Source: Paramoeba atlantica (Eukaryota > Protista > Discosea). From it: 64,000 bases of DNA. Shown here one piece after another: positions 3,001 through 60,825 of the stretch (its first letter is position 1; each line of letters begins with the position of its first letter). A model generated the notes under the pieces. It was not told the DNA's origin. It made no database searches and saw nothing but the letters and a program-made list of their open reading frames with translations. The translations under genes were made by a program, and so were the position numbers. Location of the stretch: contig CDRNVI010000164.1 in assembly GCA_977017575.1 (NCBI GenBank), positions 430,399 through 494,398 on the forward strand, read 5' to 3'.

Positions 3001-6000
3001 TTCAATCTCTCTGTCTCCTCTCTCTTCTTTCTCTCTTCTTCATCTCTTTTCGCTTGAAGTTTCCTCTCTTTCTCTCTCTTCTTCCTTTCAATCTTTTTTT
3101 GCACCGCTTCCTCTTCTTTCCTCTTTTTCAACTCAAAATCTTCGAGTTTAACTCTCTCTAACTCTTCTTCAAACATCATATCCGCTTCATCTCTTCTCTC
3201 TTTCAATTGTCGAGCATATCGAGCAATTCTCTTTTGCTCTTGTTCCCTTTCTATCTTTTCTCTCTCTGCTTCTTCGATTTGCTGTCTCTCTTCTTCTTCT
3301 TGAATCCTTTTCAAATTCGCAAGTTGTTCCTCCTCCAATCTTTTCTCTTTTTTCAATTCCTCTTTCTCCAACTGTCTCATCTCTTTCTTTTGTTTCCTTT
3401 CTTCTTTTCTTATTCTCCTTAAACGAAAACCAGCCATAATATCATCAGTAGCGCTCATCTCCTCTTCATCACTTCCTTCCTCACTCTCTTCTTCTTCTTC
3501 CGCACTCTCTTCTTTCTCTCTCTCTTTCTCTCCCTCATTACGATTTTTCATCCTTTGAATCGCACTCTGCCTCGCTTCTCTCAGCCCTTTTTCTCTTGCT
3601 TTTCTCTTCTTTTCCAAGACTTCAGGATCAGAATCATCATCTTCGTCATCGTCATCTTCATAATCCTCCTGATTATATCTCGAGAGAGACTCTTCTCCTC
3701 CCTCCTCATTCTTTCCCCCCCACATTCCTTCTCCTTCTCGTTTCATATTATCCTCCACTTTCTGCTTCTCTGAATCCCACCAAAGATCAAGTTCACTTTT
3801 CTTCTCTTGCTCTTCTCCCTTTCTTCTCTTTCCTTTTTTCTTCCTTCTTGGAGGTCCTCCTTCAGAGAATTGTTGAAGAACAACAGAAGATTGGATCTCA
3901 GCTTCATGTTTGGCCTTCGCCTCCGCCTTTTTCTTCTCTTTCGCCCAAAAATCGTCAATCGAAAAAGTTGGAGCTTTCTTCTTTTTCTTTCTTGCTTCTG
4001 GGTTCTTACCACTCGGGGTTTGTTGGGTCATCTTTTTCATCTCTTCTTCGAAGAGGGCGTTTGGATCGACATCACCGCTTCCCATCATTTCCGAAGGATG
4101 ATCAATCGTTGTCGCAAGAACAGGAGGAAGACTCGCCAATTCATTCAAAGGAGGAGTTAGAATCGAAGAAGAAGCGTTTCCATCTTGCTGCATTCTTTCC
4201 ATCTCTTCTCTGAACAAACGATCGGCTTCTGACTCGGTTTGAGTGGCCAGCTCTTCTTTTTGGATCATCTCTTGCGTTGATTTCATTTGTTGTTTTCGGA
4301 TTCGACGTTCTTCTTCCCTCTTTTTTCGTTTCTCTTCTTCTTCTTTTTGCTCTCTTAGCTTTCTTTGATCAAATTCTTCTTTTCTTTTTTGCTTCTGCTC
4401 TTCTGCGATCCTTGCTTGGCTTTCCTCTTCCTCCCGCCTCTTCTTTTCTTCTTCCTCTTGGCGTTCCATCAACCGTCTCTGCTTCTCTTTCTTTTTCATT
4501 TCCTCCATCAACTGTTTCTCTTTCTCGCGGAGTCTCTCTTCTGCAAGTCTCTTTTGTTCTTCCCACAAACTCTTCGTAGAGGCTTGAGATGATACCCTCG
4601 GAACACTTTTCACTTTTCTTTTCTCTTTTTTCGGTGGTTCGGGTTCCGGCTCCGGCTCCGGCTCCGGTTCCGGTTGTTTTGGCGCGGAAAAATGGTCGTC
4701 TTGTTGGGGGTTTTCGAGTCTTTGCATTTCTTCGTAATAGAGGCGGTCCGCTTCGGACATATCCTTGGGGTCTGGGAGAAAAGCTTCTTTTGTTCTCCGT
4801 TGGTCTCGCACTTTTCGCTTTTCTTCTCGTTTCTCTTTCTCTTTTTTTAATCTTTCTTGCTCTTTTTCCCAATCTTGAATCTCTTTATCTCTTTGTTTTT
4901 CAGAAAATTCGACGATCTTTTTTCTTTGCTCCAATTTCCACAACCGATCCTCCTCTTGCTGCCGCCTTTCCTCTCGAAGGACATTTTTCCTCTCTAAGAC
5001 CTGTTTGGCTTGCATATCCATCTTTTCTTGCACGGCCTTCTTTTCTTGTTCCCAAAGACTATCAACGAAACCTTTCTTTTCTCTTTTCTTTGATCGCTTG
5101 GTACTGTCACCTTTCTCTCCGTTTTCAACTTCCTTCATTGGAGAATCAAGAAGAGAAGGAGACGCAGCAGGTTCAGGAGAGATGGGATTCGAAGGAGACA
5201 GGAGACCATGAGGAGGGGACAAATGATCAGAAGAGGGGACGAGAGGGGAATCAGAAGAAGGAATTAAATCAGAAGGAGGGGTTGCAGAGGGTTGGAAGAA
5301 ATCAGAGGTTGCAGAGGGCTCAGCAACAGGTGGTGTTGCAGGAGGGAAGTCAGAGGAAGGAGGAAGAGGCGAGGAAGGTTGAAAGAATGCAGGAGTTAAA
5401 GGGGAGAGTGATGGTGGAGGTGACGGATGAAGAGGGCTTTCAGATTGCGGAAGAAACTCCGACTGAAGAGAAGAGGGTTGTTGAAAGAATGAGGGAGGTG
5501 TGGAAGGAGAGGGAGATGATGCCTCTGGTGGGAACGCTGTTAAAAGAGAGGGGCTTTCAAACTGAGGAATAATCTCTGGCTGAGGAGGACTTTGTGATCG
5601 AGCTGGAGATGGAGATGGAGATGGAATGAGAGGAGAAGCTGAAGGAGGAGGTGATGGAGAGCGATGTTGTTCTTGTTGTTGGGAGAGAGACTCTTCTTCA
5701 ACTTTTCTTTGTCTCTCTTCCTCTTCCCTCTTCCACTGTTCCTCTTCTTCTCTTCTCTTTCGATCTTCTTCTTCTCTCCTCTCTTCTTCCTCTTTCTTCT
5801 TCCTCTCTTCCTCTTCCTTCTTCCTTGCCTCTTCTTCTGCCACTTTCTTTTTTCTTTCCTCCTCTTTTCCTTTTTCTCTATTTTCTTCTTCCTTTTTCTG
5901 CTCCTCTTCTTCAGTTGTTTCGAGAAACACTTCTAATTTTCCCATTGTGCGATAAACAACATCGCGAACGTCTTCAGAAACGTCATTTTCAAATCGACCC

Positions 6001-16000: not shown

Positions 16001-17944
16001 TTATTTCGAACGGATAAAAGGATGACGCAAGACCTCTTCAATCGTGATCCTCTTCGTTGGATCAAGAACGAAGATCTTCTCCAATAAATCAACCAACTGA
16101 AGAACCCTATTTCGATTTGAAGGATGAGGGCAACAGTTTAAAAGCTCGAGTTTAAGATCTCTGACAGGAGAGGTTCTCTGTTTGCTCAATGAATCAACGG
16201 AAATCTTTTGAACAAACTCTGTCTTTGTCAAGGGGTCAACACGAGTCCAAAGAAAATTGAAGTCATCATCAAAATATTCAGATCGAAAGGCTGTTTTTTT
16301 CAAAAGCTTCTGGGAAGGCAACCCTTTTAAATCGAGAAATAATTTCATCATATGGGCATTATCCTCACCTTGGAAACAAAACCGACCAGTGAAAAGTTCA
16401 AAGAGGGTGCATCCAAGAGACCAGAGATCCATGGGAAAACTATACGGCAACCCCAAAATCACCTCAGGGGGACGATAAAATCGGCTGACAAGATAAGGAG
16501 CCAGAACATTCTCAGAAGAAAAGGAAGCACACCCAAAGTCAGCCAACTTTACAACTCGTCGATCTTCACCAACAAGAACATTGTCCAATTTAAAGTCTGC
16601 ATGGAGAATATCACATTTTTTCAAGTGATAAAGAGCAAGAGAAAGTCGACGGCCATACAAACGAACTGCATCAATATTCAAACCAATTTTTCGACCATAT
16701 TGATTCAACAACTCACGAAGATTCATTTGAAGAGACTCAAAGACAATACAAAGATGATCATGATCCACAAAGGAATCCAACAAACGAACACAGCTGTACT
16801 TATCTTCCGGATCCATTTGACAAACACGATTCAGCATCGCTAACTCTTTCTCGGCAACTTCCTTCAAGTCTTTTTCGGTCATTTGTTCGACATGACGAAG
16901 CATTTTAATCGCAACACGTTGTTGTGGAGTTGTTCCATCAAACGCAAGGAAAACATTTGAATATTGTCCCTCACCAAGTCGCTCAATCAATTGATATCGC
17001 CCACTCGGTCCAAGGAGAGCTCCAGGTTGAAAGTTAAAGTACCCTTTTTCGTCCCTCACTTCTTCCATAAGTTGATTATCCTTCGATGAAAGGTCTGGAC
17101 TTCTTTGATAGGGAGAGGGGGGGGAATCTTCATCGGACTTGCTCTTCTTGGACATCGTTACATCAGCATCCAAAAACCAAGAGCCAGCTTCATCATTGGC
17201 ATCATTCTCATCATTGTCATCATCAGTTCGGGAACTTTTCAAGGGGGGTGGAGGTAAAATAGTATTTTCTTCCCCCTCGAGGAGATTTTCTTTTTCGTCT
17301 TCAAAGGATATTTCCTTGGTTAATTGATGAGTCGGAGGAGTTGCAAGTTTGGTCTGGTCTTCCATCAAACAAGGTGAATTGGGAACCTTTGTTTTTTCCC
17401 CTTTCTGGCTGTACTTTTCAAGAATAGCTTGTCTTTTCATCCGACTTTTTTGCAGAAGCTCGTCTTCGGTATCCTCTTGGTGGTTTAATTCTTGTTCGAC
17501 GAGTTTTTGATACTCACCTGGGTCCTCCACTGTGTCACGATCAAAATCGAGAATAAGATTCTGACTAACTTGCTTTGTTTCCTTTTTGGGAAGAGGAACT
17601 CCTAGAAATAAAGAGGGAGAGTGAGAAGAAGGAGAACGAGAAGAAGAAGAACGAGAACTTTGATGAGAGGAAGAACGATGAGAAGAGGAGGAAGGACGAT
17701 GATGAGAAGAGGAAGAAGAAGAACGATGATAAGAGGAGGAAGGATGATGATGAGAAGAGGAAGAAGAACGACGATAAGAGGAGGAGGAACGATGGTGAGA
17801 AGAGGAAGAACGATAAGAGGAAGAATGAGAAGAGGACCGACAGGAAGAATGAGAAGAAGGGGAAACCTTAGCTCGCTTGGCACCACGAATGTACGAACTT
17901 TCGTCGCGATATCTTTTGTGGGAAGCAATAGAAACAGTTGCCAT
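16001..17944 (-). CDS. PRPF4B: PRP4 kinase (DYRK/CMGC family) with Ser/Arg/His-rich N-terminus
   Basis: Intronless. RDEKGYFNFQPG, LGEGQYSNV, VAIK, FESLQMNLRELL..YGR.IGL, HADFKLDNVL, DFG, PYLVSRFYRPPEVILG. ATG at 17944. Confidence 0.92.
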   Translation of the reverse strand: MATVSIASHKRYRDESSYIRGAKRAKVSPSSHSSCRSSSHSSSYRSSSSHHRSSSSYRRSSSSSHHHPSSSYHRSSSSSSHHRPSSSSHRSSSHQSSRSSSSRSPSSHSPSLFLGVPLPKKETKQVSQNLILDFDRDTVEDPGEYQKLVEQELNHQEDTEDELLQKSRMKRQAILEKYSQKGEKTKVPNSPCLMEDQTKLATPPTHQLTKEISFEDEKENLLEGEENTILPPPPLKSSRTDDDNDENDANDEAGSWFLDADVTMSKKSKSDEDSPPSPYQRSPDLSSKDNQLMEEVRDEKGYFNFQPGALLGPSGRYQLIERLGEGQYSNVFLAFDGTTPQQRVAIKMLRHVEQMTEKDLKEVAEKELAMLNRVCQMDPEDKYSCVRLLDSFVDHDHLCIVFESLQMNLRELLNQYGRKIGLNIDAVRLYGRRLSLALYHLKKCDILHADFKLDNVLVGEDRRVVKLADFGCASFSSENVLAPYLVSRFYRPPEVILGLPYSFPMDLWSLGCTLFELFTGRFCFQGEDNAHMMKLFLDLKGLPSQKLLKKTAFRSEYFDDDFNFLWTRVDPLTKTEFVQKISVDSLSKQRTSPVRDLKLELLNCCPHPSNRNRVLQLVDLLEKIFVLDPTKRITIEEVLRHPFIRSK

Positions 17945-18316
17945 TCTACAAAGTCTAGGTTGAATAACAAGAGAAAACAAAAGAAAGCAAACCGAATAGA
18001 AAAATCAAAATCACAGAAAAGACAAGTTGAGAACAATTTTTCTCAAAAATGGGGACCATCAAACAAAATTGAGGGACCAAATAAAAAGAAGGGGTTTGAA
18101 AAAAAGAAAATTGAAACAAAACACCGTCGAAAACTTTCTGTTTTTTTTTTTGATTTTTCCACAAAACAAAAAACCCAACACGTTTTGACTCTCTGTTCAT
18201 CAACAAGAGAGTCTTTCTTTTCTTTTCTTTTTGTTGTTTGTGGGGTTTTGGAGTGGGTGTAAACTGGTTGATGTAACTTCCTAAAGAAAGTTACACACTT
18301 TTGTTTCGTCTTCAAG

Positions 18317-21022
18317 GTGGAGTGGTTTACACGAAGAAGTTGGTTTGGAGGGTCCAATGTCCAATCACCCACATCCTCCTCCCGATTTCGAAGATGGAAT
18401 TCGAATTTGTGGTGTTCTCTCCCAAGATCTTTCCAACTTCATAATCTGATTGGAGGGAATAGAGATTTTTGGTCTCCAGCCGTTTTGAAAGCCCTTTGGC
18501 TCTTTTTTGGGGTTGTTCTGGGAATCACTCTTGTTGCTTCTTTTGGTCTCTCTTTTCAAGGAAAGTTGTCTTTTGTGTCTCTTCCCACTCCCAACTTTAC
18601 TTCTCCCAATGCTCTTGTTCGAGTTCAGATTGGATTGGAAAATCTTGAGGGTTCAATCGTTGCTTTTGGGGATTTCAATAGTGACAAGTACACTGATATT
18701 TTTTTTCTTCATTCGAATCGATCGAGTATCTCGATACTGTTGTGGCATCACCATCGATATTCTTTTCTTGGTTTGGAGAACGGAACAATTCATCTTTCAG
18801 AAGATGGGTTTTCAATTGAAAATGTTGTACCTGGAGATTTTAATAACGATGGAAAGTTAGATTTACTTATCGAATGTGCGCCATCGTCAAACAAGAATAC
18901 CAGCTCTTATTATTCTTTGAATATCTATTTAGGGCACCTCACATATGTTGAGCAACATCCTATTTGGAATGGAACTGCGACTGATCAAGTTCTTGTGTTT
19001 GATTGGGATGGTGATACCTGGTTGGATTTGTTTGGATCAACAGTTGTCGTGGGATCGGATAATACGACGATTAGTGGTGGGAGAGCCATTTGGAAAAATA
19101 ACAAACATCAAAATAATTTGAACTTTACAATAATCGATTCAATTGATTCTGTCCCTACAGGTTTCTTTTCTCTTTTCTCTCTCTTTTCTCCTCTCTTCTC
19201 TTCTCTTCTCTTCTCTTAGTCGGGAGTAGTACCATTTTTTTTTTTTGACAATCAATTTTATCCAGAGAATGGAACACCTGTTCCTTTAGCGAAACCAAAC
19301 TCTCATGGATATATTGATGTCAATGGGGATTGCTTAGCTGACTTACTTGTCACTACTGTGAATTGCAGTTCTGGCAACTGCACGAAATATCTGGAAATCT
19401 ATCGAAATAATAAGGATGGAGTTGAAAAAGGAGAGAGTCCTTTTGCCTTTCACTCCAAAATCTCTCTCTCCTCTGCTCAATATTCCCCAAAAGAGTGGGA
19501 AAAGGCGGAATCTTTAGAGGGAGGAAGAGCGTCTTTGATTGGAGGCCAGTTAACTTTTACAGATGTTGATGGAGATGGTAATGTTGATATTATCTATCCT
19601 CGTTGTGTCTCGTCAGGCAAATCGATTTTTGAATCACCTCACCAAAGAGATTGTAATTTCTTCAACAATCTTCAGATCCTCTATAACGTTCAACAAACTC
19701 TCTGCCCTTCAATTTTTGAAACGTTGGGTTTTGAAAGTCGTGAACCTTGTCGAACTCAAGATAATCTTTGCACAGAGGATCGAGATTTCACTTTTGGAGA
19801 AGTAGATCGAAACGGTTCGCCTGATACAATTATAATCAGAAAAGAAGCTTTTAAAGGATTTTATTTTTTTGCTCCACTTGGGAGTGGGACTCCACTAACG
19901 ATTCGAACGGGTGATTTTAATTTGGATGGATATCCTGATCTCCTGATCCCAATGGTTAAAAACAAAACTTCGATTTCCTCTCTGAGCAGGAAGGACGCCG
20001 CGCCTTTTGAAACTACAGTATTTGGATCTGGAGGAGGAGGAAGTCTACTTTTCAAAAGCGGGGGTGGGGATCTTTTTTCTTCTCTCTGGGAAGATGGAAA
20101 AGATTTCCTTGAAGAATTAGAGCCTGGAGATATTGTATTGAGTTTATGGAAAAATGTTCCGTGTTCCCCAGATTATTGCCATTCAAGTGCGACTGCAAAG
20201 CGACGTCGTACTTTTGTTCCTGTCGTTGGTGATGAGGTTGCAGCGCTCCTTCAAGTTAAGAACCCCTTTGCTGGAGCTTTTTTCGATCTTGATGAAACTG
20301 GCAACCCAGATATTCTTGTACTGACAAATGATGCAGCACTTCACAACAGTAGTAAAAGGACAAGAACCACACCTCTTCGTGGTGGTGGAGGTTTTGCAGA
20401 GAGAAGAAGCGCAGCAACAACAAGAACAACAACAACAACCACTCAAGAAGAGAATATTCGACTGACAGGGAATGGTGGAGAGACAGTTGCTCTTTATAAC
20501 AGTCTCTTTAATGATGCTTTCTTTCTCAAAACTCTCGGTGCTGGTGGTCAGTCTTCTGATCCGAAACCTTACGGTGTCAACTTTCCTGGAGGGTTTTTTA
20601 AATTTATTGTCACGGATCTCTCTGGTGAAAAACGGATTGCTGTGGGGGGTCAATTATCTCAATCTTCCTATCTTTCTCTTCAAACTCCTTTCCTTCTCTT
20701 TGGGCTTGGACGAGCAGGAAATTATATCGAGTTATTATATTATGGTCTCTCACTTCACGCTTCTCTCCACTGGAATAGTTGGATTTGCATCATCCCAAAT
20801 TCTCAACTTGTTGTTCTCCCATATCCTCTTGATAAGTCTCTCGACTGGCAGATGGATCTTTATCTTGCTCCCTCTGGGATTACTGTTGCTGTGATTATAA
20901 GCATGGTTTCATCTTTAGTAGCTTTGGCTGGGGTTGTCTACTTTTTCGATTGGCGGGAAAAGATGGAAGACGAAAAGGAGAAACGAGAGAAGGCCCACTT
21001 GTTTTCTTTTGATGCGTTGTGA
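18317..21022 (+). CDS. ITFG1: T-cell immunomodulatory protein / LINKIN (FG-GAP repeat single-pass membrane protein); start codon not resolved
   Basis: AFGDFNSDKYTDIF, VVPGDFNNDGKLDLLI, GDFNLDGYPDLL, FFDLDETGNPDILV, PYGVN.PG, QLSQSSYLSLQTP..LFGLGR.NYIE, IIPNSQLVVLPYP, TM then WREKMEDEKEKREKAHLFSFDAL. One intron ~19160-19265. No in-frame ATG in the 5' open frame. Confidence 0.92.
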
Positions 21023-33488: not shown

Positions 33489-33944
33489 TCAAGGAAGAGT
33501 CTCTTTTCGAAAGAAAGGAACAAGACATTTTGGGATTTGAATTCTTCCATTTGAATCCTTTTGAGAGAGAACAGGGGTGAGCCAAAAAAAAATCTCGTCC
33601 TTGCGATTATTTGAAAGAAGCCAACCTGACATTGTTCAAGAATTGATAAGATAATCCGAGGAACGGCCAAGGCAGTGGCATTCACGATGTGAACAAAAGG
33701 ATGTTTTCTTTCAGCTGATTTTTCTTTTTGGCGGATGTTCAGTCTCCGACTGAGAAGGAAAAAAAGAACAAACACACGGAAAAAAAAAATCAGCAATCAT
33801 ATTTTTCAGGGTCAAATGTTTCGAAAAACAGAAGAAAAACCTTTGATAATCAGTACAATTTGAAGCGCTTGTGACCTCCCCATATTTGTTGAAAGAGGGC
33901 ATCCACAATTCTGAGTCATATTTGTGATAGGCAGGTGCTGTTTC

Positions 33945-33987
<43 letters not shown>

Positions 33988-36069
33988 TGAAAATTAAAAA
34001 TAAAAAGGTCCTACCGAGGATCGAACTCGGGGCACGGGAATCAGAACCCCGTATGTTACCACTACACCATAGAACCATTGGTGAAAACAAGAAGGTTTTG
34101 AGGGTTTTTTGATACCAGAAAGGATAAATTTTGGATGGTAAATGTATTTGGTTCTAGAACCATTTGTGATATCAAGAAGGTTTTGAGGGTTTTTTGATAC
34201 CACAAAGGATAAATTTTGGATGGTAAATGTATTTGGTTCTCGAACCATTTGTTGAACGAATTACTTTTAAAAATGAAAAAAAACCTCCCATATCTTCTGT
34301 TGGAAGCTCCAAAACTCGTCCAGACAATCCCAATTTCATTAAAAGATCGTTTTGAATTTGCAATACTTCTTCCAAGCATTTTTCACTGGTTTCTGTGTTG
34401 CCTTCAGTAATACAGACCTTTTCAAGAAAATCAGAAAATCAGAAAAAAAAAAAAAGAATCAAACACAAAAAAAAGAAAGAAAAAAAAAGAGAACAATTTC
34501 AACTTTGCTGAACTGATGAAGACGATATAAACTAATCCCTTTGCCTCCTGTTTCCTCTCTAAAGCAATGACTGAAACCCACTAACTTGATTGGTAACTGT
34601 AAAATTAAAGAGATTGGTTTGTGTGCGAAGTTTCACAAGATTTTGTTGACCCCCCCAAAAAAAAAGAACTTGGAGGAAAAAAGTGCACCTTTTCATTCGG
34701 AATTATCTGGTCAGCATATTGCCCGATCAAAGGAATTTCAGAAGTCCCAATTAATGATACACCAGAACCTTCAATGTGATATATTTGATTATCTTCGACA
34801 ATAAGATCCTCTGAATTCTGAGACTGTGGATCCACAGACCGGAGGCGTGGTTGAAAACCAGCTCCTTGCAAATAATTGTCTCTGACAATTTCTGGAGTAA
34901 TCACCTACTCAATCAAAATTCAACACTTGAATTGTCGAATTTCGTTTGTTTTTGAAGACAAACAACAGACACCCCTCTCCACAAAATGAAAAAAATTGTA
35001 AAAAAAAAAACCGGTGTAAAACCTCTCTGAACAAGTTCACTCATTGCCCATTGTACGAGAGCAAATTCCAAAAAAACAGCGTCATTTTTGAAATAACAAA
35101 ATCGAGAACCTTTTGGAATTTTCAAATTTCGAAGGTGAGATAAAAAAAAGAAAAGAAAAAAAGTTGAATTCAATACCAGAAACTTTTGCACCAGCTTCAA
35201 AGTCAAATAAATCCAATTCTTTTCCAATTTCCAGATATGACTTTTGGTTTTCTATTGGAACGACAAATCCTCTGAGGATATTTTTGATAAAAAAGAAAGA
35301 AACCCTGAATGGGAAAAAAAAAAAAACCTGATGGAGATGGTTGAATTCCAAAATGAGAAATAACTCGAGCAGAACAATCATAATCTCCAACAGGGACAGA
35401 AGGATGTGTCCAATTTGGAAGGCGGAGGCCCGTTACTCCCATTTGAGATTTTAAACGAACTAAAAGTTCTTGTTTTCTTTTAATCTCAGCTTTCAAATCA
35501 GCCCCTTCTTGAATCTTTTTTCCTCTCTCTTCTTCAGAGATCTTTGTGGTTGTTTGACTCTTCATTGTCTTGGCAAGAGCTTTTTTGCGGTGGAGTAATT
35601 CATTTAATGTCTGTTCTTCCTTTCCTAATCGAGAATGTAATTCAACGACTTCATTAACATTTCCTTGAGATTTTCTCTTTTTGATATTTTCAGCCATCTC
35701 CTCTTTTCGAGAAATGAAAGACCTGTAGTCCAAATGAGTGAAGAGTTGTTCATCAATCGAACAATGAGATTGTTGTTGTTGTTGTTGTTGTTGATTTGAG
35801 GATGAACTTTCTTTTGTTGAAGAAGATGTTGAAGAAAGAGATGGACCACTTTTGGACAAGAAACCTCGTTTGTGATTTGTTTGAGTGAAGGAGGAGAGTA
35901 AAGGGGGGTTAGGTGACCGAGAACCCAAGAACGAAAGAAACTGATAATTGTTCTGATATCGACATAAACAACTTCGATTTCGAATAAAATTGAGAGGTTG
36001 GGAAATTGGTTGAAAGAGAGAAAAAGGAATTTGAAGAAATTCATGAGAAAACAGCCATCTTCGAGACAT
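33489..36069 (-). CDS. SARS2: Seryl-tRNA synthetase, mitochondrial type (class IIa)
   Basis: Presequence-like N-terminus, coiled-coil arm, [42 protein letters not shown], motif 2 [56 protein letters not shown], motif 3 [15 protein letters not shown]; last exon [15 protein letters not shown]. Confidence 0.93.
34006..34076 (-). tRNA. tRNA-Gln(CTG), nested in a SerRS intron (33938-34284), same strand as host
   Basis: GGTTCTATGGTGTAGTGGTAACATACGGGG-TTCTGAT-TCCCGTGCCCCGAGTTCGATCCTCGGTAGGACCT folds as a cloverleaf with anticodon CTG; T-rich run follows on the minus strand. Confidence 0.93.
34070..34249. repeat. 85-bp tandem repeat (two units plus start of a third) overlapping the tRNA-Gln 5' end
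   Basis: (T)AGAACCATT recurs at 34070, 34155 and 34240 (TCGAACCATT); units nearly identical. Confidence 0.9.
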
Positions 36070-42537: not shown

Positions 42538-43296
42538 TTAATCAGCGTGTTTTGAAAAGTAAAGACTCTTCTTTTCAGGATGAGGGATAATTGTATCAGA
42601 ACCAGGAGTCCAGTTCACAGGACAAACCTCTCCGTGTGTATCGACATACTGAAAACCCTTCACCAATCGGAGAATTTCAGGAACAGAACGACCAACAGGA
42701 GGATCATTCATTGAGAAATGTCGAAGAGTTCCTGATGGATCGATCAAATAGGTTGCTCTCAAAGTGTGTCCTGTCTCCCCATACAAAGCCCCGTATTGTC
42801 GAGAGATTGTGTGAGAAACGTCTGCCAGAAGAGGAATATTTAGTTTTCCTCCTAAACCTCCCTCTTTTCGACCAGATTGAATCCAGGCAAGGTGGGAATA
42901 GACAGAGTCAACTGAGATTCCTAGAACCTCTGTGTTGATCTCCTTGAATAATTGGTTTGAATCCGAGAATTCTAAGATCTCAGTCGGGCAAACAAAAGTA
43001 AAATCGAGTGGATAAAAGAAGAGAACGACCCATTTGTTCTTAAAGTCTGAGAGTTGGACTGTGTGGATTTCGCCATTGAGAGCAGCCTCTGTTCGAAAAG
43101 ATGGTGCAGGATTGCCAATTTGGGGGAATGGTGGAAGCCCTTTTCCCTCTTGTTCCTCCTCCTTTTGTTCTCCCTTGTCTTCTTCTCTCTCTTGTTGATC
43201 CATTGCTACATCTTCATCAAGCTCTTCTTGATCTTCCTTTGATTTTTTTTTCGGCTGTTGTCCAGGAACTTCCTCACCCTTCCTTTTTCTTGTCAT
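42538..43296 (-). CDS. Typical 2-Cys peroxiredoxin (Prx1/AhpC) with basic/acidic N-terminal extension
   Basis: FYPLDFTFVCPTEI, GGLG, GEVCPVNWTPG and C-terminal YF; ATG at 43296 (MTRKRK). Confidence 0.95.
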   Translation of the reverse strand: MTRKRKGEEVPGQQPKKKSKEDQEELDEDVAMDQQEREEDKGEQKEEEQEGKGLPPFPQIGNPAPSFRTEAALNGEIHTVQLSDFKNKWVVLFFYPLDFTFVCPTEILEFSDSNQLFKEINTEVLGISVDSVYSHLAWIQSGRKEGGLGGKLNIPLLADVSHTISRQYGALYGETGHTLRATYLIDPSGTLRHFSMNDPPVGRSVPEILRLVKGFQYVDTHGEVCPVNWTPGSDTIIPHPEKKSLYFSKHAD

Positions 43297-43398
43297 GATG
43301 AAGAAGAAGAGAAGAAAAAAGAAACTTCTGCGCAAGAAGCGGTCAACGAGACTTTTGAAAAAAAAAAAACAACTGAATCAACACCCAATGAAACAATC

Positions 43399-55978: not shown

Positions 55979-56431
55979 ATTTCTTTATTTGGTAATTTCT
56001 GTCGGTTAACTATCGGTTAACCGTTTGAGAGTTTCTTGTCGGTTAGCTATCGGTTAACCGGTTAACCGCGATATTAGTCGACCAAACAACGGTTAACCGT
56101 TAGCCAACACTAAAAAAAACAAACAAAAAAAGAGACCGTTTTTTTTTCATTTGAATTTTTGAATTTTTTGGGGGTGTTTTTTTTCTTTTTTCTTTCTTTT
56201 TTTGGTCGAAAAGGCAAAGATTGAGTTTTCGGCTTTTTGGCGAAGCGTTGTTTGAGATGAGTTTTGGCTGATGAAACGCAAGGAAATCAGGGATCAGAAC
56301 TCCCCTCAAATCTTTTTGAAGACCCAAAAAAGTGGGTTCGATGTAAATGAAATGAAATGATTCAAATTTGTTTTCTTCCTTTTTTTGTCTCAGTTTCACT
56401 TACGAAAAATTTCCATGAGTTTTTGTGACAT

Positions 56432-56568
56432 GGAGCTGTAGTTCAATGGTAGAGCACCTCGCCAGCTTGGAACTTAATTGGTTCAAGCACTGCTTAAAAC
56501 AACAATGTGAAAATATTGGTTTAAACCGGTAATGTGAGGGGATACAGGTTCGAATCCTGTCAGTTCCA
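56432..56568 (+). tRNA. tRNA-like gene copy 1 with ~65-nt structured insertion in the anticodon loop (identity unresolved)
   Basis: Acceptor GGAGCTG/CAGTTCC-A, D-arm GTTC-AATGGTA-GAGC, T-arm ACAGG-TTCGAAT-CCTGT, anticodon stem CCTCGC/GTGAGG, oligo-T terminator. Confidence 0.7.
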
Positions 56569-56640
56569 ATCTTTTTTTTCTCCCATCTAAGACCCATCTC
56601 AGATCCACAACGACAGAAAGAAGATTGGTTTTTATCACTT

Positions 56641-56772
56641 GGAGCTGTAGCCCAATGGTAGAGCACCTCGCCAGCTTGGAATTTTCCAAGCAATGCTTGA
56701 ATTACATTATGAAAATATATGGATTTAAACATGTAACGTGGGGGAATACAGGTTCGAATCCTGTCAGTTCCA
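56641..56772 (+). tRNA. tRNA-like gene copy 2 with ~60-nt structured insertion
   Basis: Same cloverleaf frame, A-box and B-box, T-run terminator. Confidence 0.7.
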
Positions 56773-56849
56773 ATCTTTTTTTTCTTCCTCCATCATCCAA
56801 GACGCCCTCAGTTACACAATGACAGAATGATGTATGGTTTTTGTGAATT

Positions 56850-56981
56850 GGAGCTGTAGCCCAACGGTAGAGCACCTCGCCAGCTTGGATTTATCCAAGC
56901 AATGCTTGAATTACATTATGAAAATATATGGATTTAAACATGTAACGTGGGGGGATACAGGTTCGAATCCTGTCAGTTCCA
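56850..56981 (+). tRNA. tRNA-like gene copy 3 with ~60-nt structured insertion
   Basis: As copy 2. Confidence 0.7.
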
Positions 56982-57061
56982 TTCTTTTTTTTTTCTTCCT
57001 CCATCATCCAAGACTCACCACAGATTCACAATGACAAAATGAAGAATGGTTTTTATCACTT

Positions 57062-57193
57062 GGAGCTGTAGCCCAACGGTAGAGCACCTCGCCAGCTTGG
57101 ATTTATCCAAGCAATGCTTGAATTACGTTATGCAAATATACGGATTTAAACATGTAACGTGGGGGGATACAGGTTCGAATCCTGTCAGTTCCA
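57062..57193 (+). tRNA. tRNA-like gene copy 4 with ~60-nt structured insertion
   Basis: As copy 3, with paired substitutions in the insertion hairpin. Confidence 0.7.
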
Positions 57194-57405
57194 TTCTTTT
57201 TTTTTCAATGCTTCATTTTTTGTTTTGTTGCTTGGCGATGAGGAAGATTTTTTTTTTCCTTTTCCTTTTTGCCATTTCCCCTCTTTTTTCGATTTCTTTT
57301 TTCGATTTCTTTTTTCTTAAATTGGAATGAATGAAAAAAATTGAGTCATAAATACATTCTTTTCTCCTACATCTCCTCCTCCTCTCTCTTGTCATGTTTT
57401 TTTTA

Positions 57406-60400
57406 TCAGGAACTAATTCCCTTAACCTGTTCGAGAAACAAATTGCAAACAGGATCTTGAGACTGAAGAAAACTGGTTAAATCAGTCCCGTAAGGAGAAA
57501 GGGAGACTTTCAAAGTGGGATCGGGAGAGACTTCTCGAGAATGCATTGATCCTTGTTGGGAACAAAACACAATAAACTGGGAAAGTTGGCTATGACAAGC
57601 CTCAAATTCAGAGTGCTGTTGACAGAATGTAAGGATCCTGAAAAAAGTGATGGCCATCAATCGAGATTCTTGTGGGAGTAACCCGTGTAGGGGGAACGAA
57701 ATTAGACAATGAAGAAGCTTCCCAAAAACCTCTCTTTCATTTTGGAATTGGGACAAAACAAAATTCGGATCCAATGCAATTAAACGACCAAACAACAACA
57801 AGTAATAAACTTTCAGATGTTCTTCCTCACCACAACTCACTTGAAGGCCAAGGAGCCGATCAATGATTCGTCTAAGTAAATCGACCGTCACAGGAGGATC
57901 AATCTTTACAATTCGAGTGGTAAAAGCATGAAAGATCGTAAAAGCGTTCAGTGCCATTGGTGCTGAAACCTCATCAAGAATTTTCCAAGTTAAGTGCAAA
58001 ATTAAGTGGGAGTGTGTCCTGATACCTTGATCATCTCCCAAACATAAATAATGGAGCAAGACATGGAGAATAGGGAGGGTTTGCTCGAAGAGACTCCCAT
58101 CGATGATAGGTTGTAATAGGGGAAGAAGACCCCACAGTTCTTGGGGAAAAGATTGTTTGGTTGTTTGCCTCAAAATGGAGTGCCAAAGTCGAACTCCATC
58201 TTCAAGTAAGTCCTCTTGAGATTCAGATGTAACGACATTCAAGGAATCTTGAATTAAAGGAAGAATTCGGAGAAGTTGAGGCAGAGGTAATCCTGGTCCA
58301 TGAGCTTTTACCACACGCCTTAAACTTCTCAAGATATTAAGACGCAAAAGCTCTGCTTCACTGTCATGATTCAAGTTCCACAAATGGGTAAGCAAAGAAA
58401 AGAGAGAATCTAACGCAGCTTGGATATCTTTTCCAAGAATTTTCACTATTTCTGACACAACGTTTAAAACTTGGATATGGATAAAACTTCGACGCAAACG
58501 AGTAACTAGATCGATTAAATAAGAGAAGATCTCGGAAACAAAAGGGAAGAAAGCCTCTTTGTTAAAATCAAACCCCATCACAACATTTCTTAATGCAATG
58601 GAACCCCAAATTCTGACGACTAAATCTTCTTCAGTTCGAAGGAGAAAACGGAGAGTCGAGTAGATTACTGGGCTGAGTTCTTTTGGAATTTCAATTCCGG
58701 AGAGACAAAACCAATTTTCAATGATAACTGCAATCCGTCGACGGATGAGACGATATCGAGGGTCTTGGAACTGGAGGTCAAGAGCAAATGATTTCTCAAA
58801 TAACTCTTCAAATGACACTTGGTCTTTCAAGTCAAGACCACAGAGAGCCAAAGCGTTGTAGACAGCATCTTTTTGCAAGATCGATAGAAGGGGGATATTT
58901 GGATTTCTCTCCGCTTTTAAACAACCGCCAAGAAGATCGAGAATCACTGGAAGGCAACATTGAGGCGATTTTTGACAAAGAGTCGAAAACAAGATTTCAG
59001 CACAAGGGCGAACACGTTCTTGCCAAGAGTTAAGTTCCGTCATTACAAGTTGTTCGGGATCATTTTCCCATTCTTCAAGATCTGTCGGAGTCATCACAAA
59101 ATATACACAAATGAGAAGTCGGCAAAGTTCTTGGATCGTTTGAGGGGTAAAGTAAGTGTCAAGTGCGCTAGCTGCTTCGAGAACCTAAAAAAGTTTTTTT
59201 TTTTTGATTAATATTTCCAAGTAAAGTTTGGTCAACAACAAAGAGAAAAAAATATCAAGAAATAAGAAAAATTAATCCACAAAAAGAAGTCTCTGATTTA
59301 CGAACCTAATATAAATATAATCACAATTAAACAACAACAAAAAAAAAAAAAAAGAAAAGTTTACCTGAGAATTTTGTGAATCATCTCCTGAGGTGACTCG
59401 GTACTCAAGCGTATTCAAAACGTCGTGAAAGAAGGTCAAAGAACCAATACAAAACTTCTCAAATTCAATGAAACCATTGACAGATCGTTCTTCATTCGAA
59501 AGAAACTGAGCAAGAGTGTTTAAAGAAAGCGTCAAATGGTGTCGAAAAGCAAGTGGCTCTTTTTCTTGCATCGCCAAGATCGTTCGAATCCCAAGAAGCA
59601 TCAACTTTGAATAAGTTTTTTGCAAAAAGGGAATCTTTTTTCTGAAGGAATCGAATTGGGGAAAATAGAGGAGAATTTGGTGAACCCATTGACGGATAGC
59701 TTTTCCATGTGCACCAAAGACTTTTCCTTTACTTTGCCAAGTTGCACCATTTGAAAGAGAAAGATTCCCACCGCTCCCGCTACCACCACCACTGCTACTG
59801 CTACTACTACTACTACTACTACTCCCATCTGATGATGCAAGATTTTCGCTCGATTGATTTTCAGAAATCTCAAAGAGACCCGCCTGAAACATCGATAAGA
59901 AAAGTCGGAAACAAGCAATGTTGAAATCTCCAAGACAGAGGAGAGATGGTCCTTTGGTCTCAATTTCGGTTGGAAGAAGAGATGATGTTTCAGCTAAAAG
60001 TTCTTCAACAGAGAGACGCCATTCAAAAAGAAGAATTTTAAGTACAAAGGGCATAATGTTTCGAAAACAGAGAATCGCAGATTGACGTGAACTATTCTCG
60101 ACGACCATTCGAAGTGCTTTTGCGGAATTAAGACGTTGATGAGGGATACGAATTTGGAGTTGGGTTAAAAGTTGAGAGATTACATCTGGCCAGATTTCAG
60201 GAAAGTCAAACGTTGATATTTGTGCGATGGAGAGGTTGCATTGCTCGCTTACCAATCGATCCTCCACTTTTAATGATTCGAGGAAAATTTCTCGGATTCT
60301 TTTCTTCAACATCTCGTTCAACAAATTCCAGTTTGTTCGAATTAAATTTTTGACAACAACAATAGCTGATAAACGAAGACTCGGTTCACACATGTTCGGG

Positions 60401-60573
60401 GTCAGAGCGAGCTGTAAAAGACCCAGATACAAACCTTCGTTTTCCTTCATCCCATCAAACTGATTCTCAACAGCAATTCGTGTTTCATTATCATGAGATC
60501 TTAACTGAGAAAGGAGATGGACAAGAAAGGGAGGGTCGACACCATTCTGCACCACAGCGTCGTGGTGAGACAT
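57406..60573 (-). CDS. IPO11: Importin-11 (importin-beta family)
   Basis: IBN_N (LRLSAIVVVKNLIRTNW..SIAQISTFDFPEIWPDVI), DLEEWENDPE..WQERVRPCAEILF, LQKDAVYNAL, LIRRRIAVIIENW. Last exon boundary uncertain. Confidence 0.88.
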
Positions 60574-60825
60574 TTCATTGAACGCAAAACACAAAACGCA
60601 AAACGCGGGTTGGAAGAAAAAAACCAAAACGCACAAAAAAAAAAAAGAAACACAAAAAAAAAGAAACACAAAAAAGAAACACAAAAAAGAAACACAAAAA
60701 AAAAACAAGAGGGGAAAAATCTCTATTAAGCAAAAAATAAGAAACTTTTTAGCGCCCTAAAAATAATTTGATGACGTGAGACAAAAAGTCTTTCTTTTTT
60801 TGCGTTTTCTGGTTGGCCCGAAACG

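What the first reader, a model, noticed from the sequence alone, without database searches (positions are those of the whole stretch)
56432..57193. Tandem array of four tRNA-like Pol III genes with no canonical anticodon loop
Four units at 209/209/212-bp spacing have well-formed acceptor, D and T arms, A/B boxes, A15-U48 and oligo-T terminators, plus homologous spacers. A ~60-nt insert sits in the anticodon loop. Canonical 37/38 splicing gives C32-C33-AGC-U37-G38, which lacks U33 and purine 37, and I find no standard A-I pair or bulge-helix-bulge. Only non-canonical excision near 32-35 with a 6-bp stem gives a GUA (Tyr) loop. They are therefore either tRNAs with an unknown splicing or editing route, or an unspliced ~132-nt ncRNA class that uses a tRNA shell as promoter, processing signal and aminoacylation handle.
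Basis: partly seen in the sequence, partly recalled or inferred. Interest (0 to 1): 0.88.

Follow-up and report, generated by a model that had tools for sequence, protein, structure and literature searches.

The report
Four tRNA-shelled genes with structured insert
Four tandem, well-conserved tRNA-shaped genes carry a folded ~60-base domain where the anticodon loop should be and lack the known signals for removing it, so they are either a new tRNA-derived small RNA or a tRNA spliced in an unknown way; RNA data are needed to decide.

Summary
Four units (56432-56568, 56641-56772, 56850-56981, 57062-57193, + strand; spacing 209/209/212) each score as tRNA in Rfam (43-49 bits, cut-off 29). The acceptor, D and T arms are intact, 73-74 nt are looped out of the anticodon arm, and a T8-T10 run follows each unit.

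No excision gives an ordinary tRNA:
- A 37/38 cut gives the loop CCAGCUG (ARAGORN: Ala-AGC), with no U33 or purine 37.
- Only a cut at 32/33 gives CU-GUA-AC (ARAGORN: Tyr-GUA). It then has a 6-bp anticodon stem and G1-C72, where eukaryotic Tyr identity needs C1-G72. Unit 1 has G in place of U33.
- My enumeration found no bulge-helix-bulge at either site.

The insert folds as two hairpins, one capped by a GNRA loop (z -2.6 to -4.2). Among units 2-4 it is 92-97% identical, against 67-85% for the spacers, and its substitutions mostly keep the pairing.

Ordinary intron-less tRNA genes, including a tandem tRNA-Arg triplet, lie on the same contig. No RNA run covered the locus and no relative was found, so expression and splicing are untested.

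Best reading (0.45): a tRNA-derived Pol III RNA that keeps the structured domain. Main rival (0.30): a Tyr-like tRNA with an ectopic intron that does not use a bulge-helix-bulge. The scan noted this same stretch before (s1-396138, s1-396349).

The parts
56432..56568 (+). Unit 1, 137 nt. tRNA shell 5' part 56432-56463, insert 56464-56527 (64 nt), 3' part 56528-56568. This is the divergent copy: G at the U33 position, fully paired D stem, U-A in the long stem.
   Evidence: Rfam tRNA 49.2 bits; ARAGORN -i; fold
56641..56772 (+). Unit 2, 132 nt. Shell 56641-56672, insert 56673-56731 (59 nt), 3' part 56732-56772.
   Evidence: Rfam tRNA 44.2 bits; ARAGORN -i Tyr(GUA) with intron at 32/33
56850..56981 (+). 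Unit 3, 132 nt. Shell 56850-56881, insert 56882-56940, 3' part 56941-56981. The 6-bp stem pairs 56875-56880 with 56947-56952. Hairpin 1 is 56883-56900. Hairpin 2 is 56902-56941 and has a GAAA loop. GUAAC (56942-56946) is single-stranded in the junction.
   Evidence: Rfam 43.0 bits; minimum-free-energy and centroid folds agree; RNAalifold consensus
57062..57193 (+). Unit 4, 132 nt. Shell 57062-57093, insert 57094-57152, 3' part 57153-57193. It differs from unit 3 in the insert at three positions only: an A-U to G-C pair swap in hairpin 2, and GAAA to GCAA in the loop, which is still GNRA.
56572..56579 (+). T8 run 4 nt after unit 1, a Pol III terminator-like signal. The equivalents are 56776-56783 (T8), 56985-56994 (T10) and 57197-57205 (T9).
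   Evidence: sequence
56388..56431 (+). Upstream block shared by all four units: C(T/A)CAG..CAC about 40 nt upstream, and G-TTTTT-R-T about 8-14 nt upstream of position 1. It recurs in each spacer.
   Evidence: alignment A1, invariant columns

Best explanation
These are four active copies of a tRNA-derived RNA polymerase III gene whose product is not an ordinary decoding tRNA. The internal A and B boxes drive transcription and the T run ends it. The intact acceptor, D and T arms should let RNase P, RNase Z and the CCA-adding enzyme finish the ends, as for a tRNA. In place of a 7-nt anticodon loop, a 6-bp stem closes a three-way junction that carries two hairpins, one capped by a GNRA tetraloop. 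I propose that this domain stays in the mature RNA of about 132-137 nt, or is at least the selected functional part. [quoted passage not shown] Shown here: the gene anatomy, the conservation pattern, the predicted fold and the absence of known splice signals. Inferred: transcription, end processing, retention of the insert and any cellular role.
For: 1. Rfam tRNA hits cover the whole shell, with perfect A and B boxes and terminators.
2. Among units 2-4 the shell is 97-100% identical and the insert 92-97%, while the spacers are only 67-85%. The transcribed part, insert included, is therefore held constant.
3. The inserts fold better than shuffled sequence (z -2.6, -3.7, -3.6, -4.2), and the minimum-free-energy fold equals the centroid.
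4. Substitutions preserve structure. All three unit 3/unit 4 differences are neutral for the fold: an A-U to G-C swap, and GAAA to GCAA, which is still GNRA. Unit 1 is only 72% identical in the insert yet keeps both hairpins, the GAAA loop and the 6-bp stem. RNAalifold finds 40 pairs, two of them compensatory.
5. No excision gives a normal tRNA. The 37/38 cut gives loop CCAGCUG. The 32/33 cut gives a 6-bp anticodon stem, and G33 in unit 1. There is no bulge-helix-bulge or A-I pair.
6. G1-C72 conflicts with the C1-G72 that eukaryotic TyrRS requires (PMC1934993). A3-U70 conflicts with Ala identity (G3.U70, established knowledge).
7. Other tRNA genes on the same contig (Gln, His, Arg x3) are canonical and intron-less at 55-65 bits, so this genome is not generally sloppy about tRNA form.
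Against: There is no RNA evidence at all. The one possible RNA run held nothing and the other runs are DNA contigs. With only four linked copies, gene conversion confined to the transcribed part could mimic selection. In units 2-4 the loop obtained by the 32/33 cut (C-U-GUA-A-C) is fully canonical, and GUA is the anticodon whose genes carry introns in eukaryotes generally; all 42 Tyr genes of Entamoeba do, and they sit in an array (PMC8718801). That is an uncomfortable coincidence for a pure ncRNA reading. No known ncRNA family matches, and no homologue in another organism was found to test conservation.
Confidence: 0.45

Rival explanations
1. They are the organism's tRNA-Tyr(GUA)-type genes, or an extra set, with a 59-nt structured intron at the ectopic position 32/33. 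A splicing endonuclease that does not need a bulge-helix-bulge removes it, leaving a 73-nt tRNA with loop CU-GUA-AC on a 6-bp anticodon stem. Unit 1 would be a non-decoding copy.
For: ARAGORN -i calls units 2-4 as Tyr(GUA). The in-silico product folds into a cloverleaf with a canonical 7-nt loop. [quoted passage not shown] Tandem tRNA arrays are normal on this contig. In units 2-4 the intron segment UUAC can pair with GUAA of the anticodon region, which places the proposed 3' site after the second base of a 3-nt bulge (CA|U) (rows '5SS after 71, 3SS after 91'). The proposed 5' site (CC|A) lies in the unpaired junction next to hairpin 1. Long, structured, conserved tRNA-Tyr introns are known in flies (PMC4536317). 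An earlier, unchecked note reports another oddly placed insert in a tRNA-Ser of this genome (s1-389591).
Against: The enumeration found no bulge-helix-bulge or relaxed form that joins the two sites. G1-C72 is present where C1-G72 is the strongest Tyr determinant in eukaryotes (PMC1934993). There is an extra nucleotide between the D and anticodon stems, that is, a 6-bp anticodon stem. Unit 1 has G33 yet keeps the whole fold with compensating changes. The half-site pairing competes with the better-supported hairpin 2 and is absent in unit 1. To my knowledge, ectopic nuclear tRNA introns are reported only in some algae and nucleomorphs, and always with BHB-like motifs (PMC3728597, PMC4090602).
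Confidence: 0.3
2. They are relics of tRNA-Ala(AGC)-type genes with an intervening sequence at or near the canonical site. Any splicing by the ordinary ruler mechanism gives a crippled tRNA (loop CCAGCUG), so the array is non-functional or nearly so, and gene conversion keeps the copies alike.
For: In standard numbering, AGC sits at positions 34-36, and ARAGORN calls the 37/38 product Ala(AGC). In the viral collection the exact 22-nt 3' end occurs only in two phage tRNA-Ala genes that have G3.U70. Here one base differs, giving A3-U70 and G4.U69. The loop lacks U33 and purine 37, as expected after loss of decoding constraint.
Against: Spacers have diverged by 15-33% while shell and insert stayed 92-100% identical. 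The substitutions that did occur keep the RNA fold, which decay does not predict. The canonical 5' cut would fall inside the stable hairpin 1, and C32 has no A-I partner.
Confidence: 0.12
3. They are a cluster of tRNA-derived SINE heads or another retroposed repeat.
For: The genome is reported to hold tRNA-headed SINEs (earlier notes s1-377432 and s1-369842, unchecked).
Against: The copies are head-to-tail with homologous spacers. Each ends exactly at the discriminator plus a T run, with no LINE-like tail or target-site duplication. Contig depths in the DNA runs fit about four copies in the whole genome: 75 for unique flank, about 130-140 for segments shared by two units, and about 417 summed over the overlapping contigs at the four-copy segment. 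No other copy lies in the 100-kb contig.
Confidence: 0.03

Closest known systems
Nuclear tRNA genes with ectopic introns (Cyanidioschyzon merolae, Chondrus crispus, nucleomorphs; PMC3728597, PMC4090602, PMC13578239)
   Same: A complete tRNA shell is interrupted by an intervening sequence away from 37/38. tRNA finders call these genes only when intron search is relaxed.
   Different: Those introns carry bulge-helix-bulge or relaxed BHB motifs and give standard tRNAs. Here no such motif was found, and the product would have a 6-bp anticodon stem and the wrong 1-72 pair for Tyr. The host looks amoebozoan rather than algal.
Eukaryotic tRNA-Tyr(GUA) genes with canonical introns, including arrayed Entamoeba genes (PMC8718801) and the long structured fly tRNA-Tyr intron that becomes a circular RNA (PMC4536317)
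   Same: GUA anticodon context, an obligatory intron, tandem arrangement, and in flies a long conserved structured intron.
   Different: In those genes the intron is at 37/38 and the anticodon lies in the 5' exon. The acceptor begins with C1-G72 (PMC1934993). Here the GUA lies 3' of the insert and the acceptor begins with G1-C72.
Vault RNAs (PMC7904556)
   Same: Pol III type 2 genes with tRNA-type A and B boxes, a stem joining the 5' and 3' ends (from my own knowledge), a central domain, similar length to my knowledge, and clustered gene copies.
   Different: Vault RNAs lack a full cloverleaf and a tRNA-type 3' end. The Rfam Vault model gives no match here even at E 10. Association with vault particles is untested.
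Trypanosomatid SRP tRNA-like RNA, sRNA-76 / sRNA-85 (PMC2800229)
   Same: A tRNA-shaped Pol III RNA that is not a decoder and works as part of a ribonucleoprotein on the ribosome.
   Different: That RNA is 76-85 nt with an anticodon-like loop and no inserted domain. There is no sequence relation, and this contig does not look kinetoplastid.
tmRNA and tRNA-Ala-derived ncRNAs (BC1/ID); my own knowledge
   Same: An Ala-like acceptor end used as the shell for a non-tRNA body.
   Different: G3.U70 is absent. ARAGORN finds no tmRNA. The permuted-tmRNA model scores 14-16 bits against a cut-off of 47. There is no tag reading frame.

Membership tests
tRNA (Rfam RF00005), cloverleaf shell | 7-bp acceptor, D arm, T arm with GGTTCGAATCC, discriminator; score above the gathering cut-off | tested here: met
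   43.0-49.2 bits against 29, model positions 1-71 matched. Units 2-4 have one C.A mismatch in the D stem.
Functional decoding tRNA | 7-nt anticodon loop with U33 and purine 37, either contiguous or after 37/38 intron removal, on a 5-bp stem | tested here: not met
   There is no contiguous loop. The 37/38 product has loop CCAGCUG. Only the 32/33 cut gives CUGUAAC, on a 6-bp stem, and unit 1 gives CGGUAAU.
Eukaryotic cytosolic tRNA-Tyr | C1-G72 pair and A73 (strongest determinants), plus GUA anticodon | tested here: not met
   The units have G1-C72 and A73. The requirement comes from PMC1934993. GUA appears only after a hypothetical ectopic excision.
Eukaryotic canonical tRNA intron | Position 37/38, with the 3' site in a bulge next to an anticodon-intron (A-I) pair | tested here: not met
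   By hand, C32 faces A at intron position -3. The 5' site would lie inside hairpin 1.
BHB (archaeal-type or ectopic) tRNA intron | Two 3-nt bulges separated by a 4-bp helix and flanked by helices, with both cuts after the second bulge base | tested here: not met
   I enumerated all site pairs in all four units, requiring 3 or 4 pairs in the central helix and flanking helices of at least 2 bp. No motif shared by all four units gives a usable tRNA. Only a 3' half-site exists, in units 2-4.
tRNA-Ala | G3.U70 wobble pair | tested here: not met
   The units have A3-U70 and G4.U69 (pairs 3:135 and 4:134). The same 3' end in phage tRNA-Ala genes does have G3.U70.
Pol III type 2 gene | Internal A and B boxes and a downstream T-run terminator | tested here: met
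   Sequence motifs and T8-T10 runs are present. Transcription itself was not tested.
Vault RNA (RF00006) | Match to the family model; association with vault particles | tested here: not met
   No Vault match at E up to 10. Particle association cannot be tested here.
tRNA-derived SINE | Many dispersed copies, a 3' tail related to a LINE, target-site duplications | tested here: not met
   Only tandem copies, with depth fitting about four per genome.
Expressed or aminoacylated RNA | Reads, defined ends, CCA, charging | not testable with these tools
   No RNA run holds the locus; only DNA contigs were laid.

The most novel reading that the evidence does not exclude
This is a previously undescribed class of Pol III small RNA in an amoebozoan-like protist. 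A complete, processable tRNA shell, probably derived from tRNA-Ala, has its anticodon loop replaced by a conserved three-way junction with a GNRA-capped hairpin. It would work as a tRNA mimic or ribonucleoprotein scaffold, a possible functional counterpart of vault RNA or of the trypanosomatid SRP tRNA-like RNA, rather than as a decoder.
Probability: 0.4. Interest if true: 0.75.

Novelty: new variant of a known kind. Interest (0 to 1): 0.6.

Why it matters
Either outcome would be new. If the RNA stays unspliced, it shows a tRNA gene being rebuilt into a structured non-decoding RNA while keeping every feature needed for tRNA-type transcription and end processing. It would also be a candidate for small-RNA partners in amoebozoans; to my knowledge no vault RNA has been reported there. 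If it is spliced, it would be the first ectopic nuclear tRNA intron outside algae and nucleomorphs. It would be removed without a bulge-helix-bulge, and the resulting GUA tRNA would have a bacterial-type G1-C72 end. That would raise the questions of which enzyme cuts it and which synthetase charges it. One tRNA-sequencing experiment would decide between the two.

Tried and rejected
1. Metagenome scan with the 5' half (D arm plus anticodon-stem strand). It returned 65 loci, nearly all bacterial tRNA-Asn(GTT) genes plus chance hits in coding DNA, and no homologue.
2. Viral-collection scans. These found only two phage tRNA-Ala(TGC) genes that share the 22-nt 3' end.
3. Sequencing runs and read laying. 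There were only DNA contigs from one study. The one possible RNA run laid nothing, so there is no expression or junction evidence.
4. Synteny through the neighbouring importin-11-like gene. No close relative exists in the protein collection.
5. Rfam at E up to 10 over the array. Nothing but tRNA was credible. The FourU, permuted-tmRNA, H/ACA and C/D hits are all far below their cut-offs.
6. C/D or H/ACA snoRNA inside the insert, hammerhead-like core. Checked by eye and no boxes were found.
7. Primer-binding site complementary to the 3' end plus CCA, searched in the window. None found.
8. Walking the ENA contig with seven look-ups (one failed) to scan the remaining ~36 kb. This found only ordinary tRNA-Arg x3 and tRNA-His, and no canonical tRNA-Tyr or further odd tRNA.
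9. Alternative exon layouts: an intron at 26/27, or the anticodon arm taken wholly from the 3' part. Rejected by hand because the stems do not pair.
10. Earlier-findings look-up by sequence. Blank.

Full report
**Observation**

The window holds a 3.7-copy tandem repeat of period 209 at 56419-57204. Rfam's tRNA model matches four units from model position 1 to 71:
- 56432-56568 at 49.2 bits
- 56641-56772 at 44.2 bits
- 56850-56981 at 43.0 bits
- 57062-57193 at 43.0 bits

The cut-off is 29, and 73-74 nt are looped out of the anticodon arm in each. The 25-nt T arm plus acceptor 3' strand is identical in all four units and occurs nowhere else in the window. Each unit has a tRNA-type A box and a perfect B box, a discriminator A, and a T8-T10 run starting 4 nt downstream. 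ARAGORN in default mode reports only the tRNA-Gln at 34006-34076. Small corrections: units 2-4 have a C12.A23 mismatch in the D stem, and unit 1 differs at the position that would be U33.

**What excision could give**

ARAGORN with intron search calls units 2-4 as tRNA-Tyr(GUA) with a 59-nt intron between positions 32 and 33. It calls unit 1 as a poor Ile(AAU). I made both products in silico.
- Cutting at 32/33 gives a 73-nt cloverleaf with loop C-U-GUA-A-C. The anticodon stem has 6 bp (CCUCGC/GUGGGG) and the variable loop 4 nt. Unit 1 gives C-G-GUA-A-U.
- Cutting at the canonical 37/38 gives a 71-nt RNA with loop CCAGCUG, which ARAGORN calls Ala(AGC). It lacks U33 and a purine at 37.

By hand, no other exon layout gives a paired anticodon stem.

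I then enumerated every pair of sites in each unit for a bulge-helix-bulge: a 4-bp central helix with at least 3 pairs, 3-nt bulges cut after the second base, and flanking helices of at least 2 bp. No motif shared by the units yields a usable tRNA. The only relevant hit is a 3' half-site in units 2-4. There the intron segment UUAC pairs with GUAA, which puts CA|U in a bulge. This pairing competes with the better-supported hairpin 2 and is absent from unit 1. The canonical A-I pair is also missing, because C32 faces an A.

**The insert is a structured domain**

RNAfold gives the same architecture for all units. A 6-bp stem closes a three-way junction. Two unpaired bases (CA) come first, then hairpin 1 (a stem of 7 bp, extended in unit 1), then one A. 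Hairpin 2 follows: a basal stem of 3-4 bp, a 1x1 loop, 7 bp, a bulge, and 6 bp capped by GAAA. GUAAC remains single-stranded. The inserts fold better than dinucleotide shuffles (z -2.6, -3.7, -3.6, -4.2), and the minimum-free-energy and centroid folds coincide.

Among units 2-4 the flanking spacers are 67-85% identical, the insert 92-97% and the shell 97-100%. The three differences between units 3 and 4 in the insert are an A-U to G-C swap in hairpin 2, and GAAA to GCAA, which is still a GNRA loop. Unit 1 is only 72-74% identical in the insert and carries indels, yet it keeps both hairpins, the GAAA loop and the closing stem. RNAalifold on the MAFFT alignment finds 40 pairs, two of them with changes on both sides. 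My structure-guided reading adds two more swaps in hairpin 2 and one broken pair. With four linked copies this is suggestive, not proof, because conversion limited to the transcribed part could contribute.

**Identity features**

The acceptor stem is G1-C72, G2-C71, A3-U70, G4.U69, C5-G68, U6-A67, G7-C66, followed by A73. Eukaryotic and archaeal TyrRS use C1-G72 and A73 as their strongest determinants, whereas G1-C72 is the bacterial form (PMC1934993). The Tyr reading therefore fails a defining feature.

In the viral collection the exact 22-nt 3' end is found only in two phage tRNA-Ala(TGC) genes whose acceptors have G3.U70. AGC also sits at positions 34-36 in standard numbering. The shell thus looks derived from a tRNA-Ala type, but G3.U70 is lost, so Ala identity fails too. 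I recall that some AlaRS enzymes accept G4:U69, but I could not find the paper in the library, so this remains a lead only.

**Context**

The window is part of ENA assembly ERZ24900291, contig ctg3966l (102,939 bp); the window corresponds to record positions 6668-70667. The rest of the contig holds a tandem triplet of ordinary tRNA-Arg(ACG) genes (63-65 bits) and a tRNA-His(GUG) gene, all intron-less. Tandem tRNA arrays are therefore normal here, and other tRNAs are canonical.

Protein hits point to an amoebozoan-like protist. The best named relatives of the peroxiredoxin at 42538-43335 are from Paramoeba atlantica (67%), Arcella, Acanthamoeba and Balamuthia. The PRP4 kinase has only about 50% identity to any named protein. 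This does not fit the 'kinetoplastid-like' label that earlier notes gave to other pieces of the assembly. A Paramoeba-type host with a kinetoplastid endosymbiont would reconcile the two, but that is speculation.

**Copy number and expression**

The DNA runs of one study hold the array. Unitig depths are about 75 for unique flank, about 130-140 for segments shared by two units, and about 417 summed over the overlapping contigs at the four-copy segment. This fits four copies in the genome. No RNA run held the locus, so expression, ends and junctions are untested.

**Search for relatives**

None was found. The metagenome scan returned bacterial tRNA-Asn genes. The neighbouring importin-11-like gene has no close relative. 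Rfam at permissive thresholds shows nothing but tRNA.

**Weighing**

For a spliced Tyr-like tRNA:
- The loop in units 2-4 is canonical.
- GUA is the anticodon whose genes carry introns in eukaryotes and are arrayed in Entamoeba (PMC8718801).
- Long, structured tRNA-Tyr introns exist (PMC4536317).

Against it:
- The intron is ectopic with no BHB, whereas known ectopic nuclear introns have one (PMC3728597, PMC4090602).
- The 1-72 pair is wrong for Tyr.
- The anticodon stem has 6 bp.
- One copy lacks U33 but otherwise preserves structure.

For a non-decoding RNA:
- All of those anomalies stop being problems.
- The insert behaves as a selected fold.
- tRNA-derived Pol III RNAs with A and B boxes and a central domain are well known (vault RNAs, PMC7904556; the trypanosomatid SRP tRNA-like RNA, PMC2800229).

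Against it:
- The GUA coincidence.
- The complete lack of expression data.

I put the tRNA-shelled ncRNA at 0.45, ectopic splicing to a GUA tRNA at 0.30, Ala-type relics kept alike by conversion at 0.12, and a SINE-type repeat at 0.03. The remainder is unassigned.

**Verdict**

This is a real and unusual locus. It is a new variant of a known kind (tRNA gene or tRNA-derived Pol III RNA), and one tRNA-sequencing experiment or a whole-genome tRNA census would resolve it.

Noticed in passing
L071:12085-12515 (record 86204-86634 of ENA contig ctg3966l, about 16 kb beyond the window end): Tandem triplet of identical or near-identical canonical tRNA-Arg(ACG) genes (63-65 bits), spaced 187 and 171 nt apart in pyrimidine-rich spacers. 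Tandem tRNA arrays seem usual in this genome, as in Entamoeba.
   Followed up: partly
L073:19379-19450 (record 3613-3684, about 3 kb before the window start): Canonical intron-less tRNA-His(GUG), 63.9 bits.
   Followed up: no
window 56783-56855 and 56994-57046, minus strand (spacers of the array): Weak matches to a trypanosomatid single-hairpin H/ACA snoRNA model (RF01549): 16-18 bits against a cut-off of 40, E about 1-3. Probably chance, but they fall on the conserved part of two spacers.
   Followed up: no
window 42538-43335 (-) and 16001-17980 (-): Taxon signal. The best named hits of the 2-Cys peroxiredoxin are Paramoeba atlantica (67%), Arcella, Acanthamoeba and Balamuthia. The PRP4 kinase has only about 50% identity to any named protein. 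This contig looks amoebozoan-like, not kinetoplastid as earlier notes label other pieces of the assembly.
   Followed up: partly
window 33940-34005 (-), downstream of tRNA-Gln(CTG) at 34006-34076: The tRNA-Gln gene is followed by T5 and then, about 30 nt further on, an uninterrupted run of about 40 T.
   Followed up: no
window 57406-59097 and 59272-60708 (-); 18317-19219 and 19358-21022 (+): The importin-11-like and ITFG1-like genes are each split into two reading frames by gaps of about 140-175 nt, consistent with short spliceosomal introns. The array lies about 210 nt beyond the 3' end of the importin-like gene, on the opposite strand.
   Followed up: no
window 56388-56431 and the matching part of each spacer: Conserved upstream blocks before every unit: C(T/A)CAG..CAC near -40, and a T5 run at -13 to -9. 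They may be an upstream Pol III element or a back-up terminator for the preceding unit.
   Followed up: no
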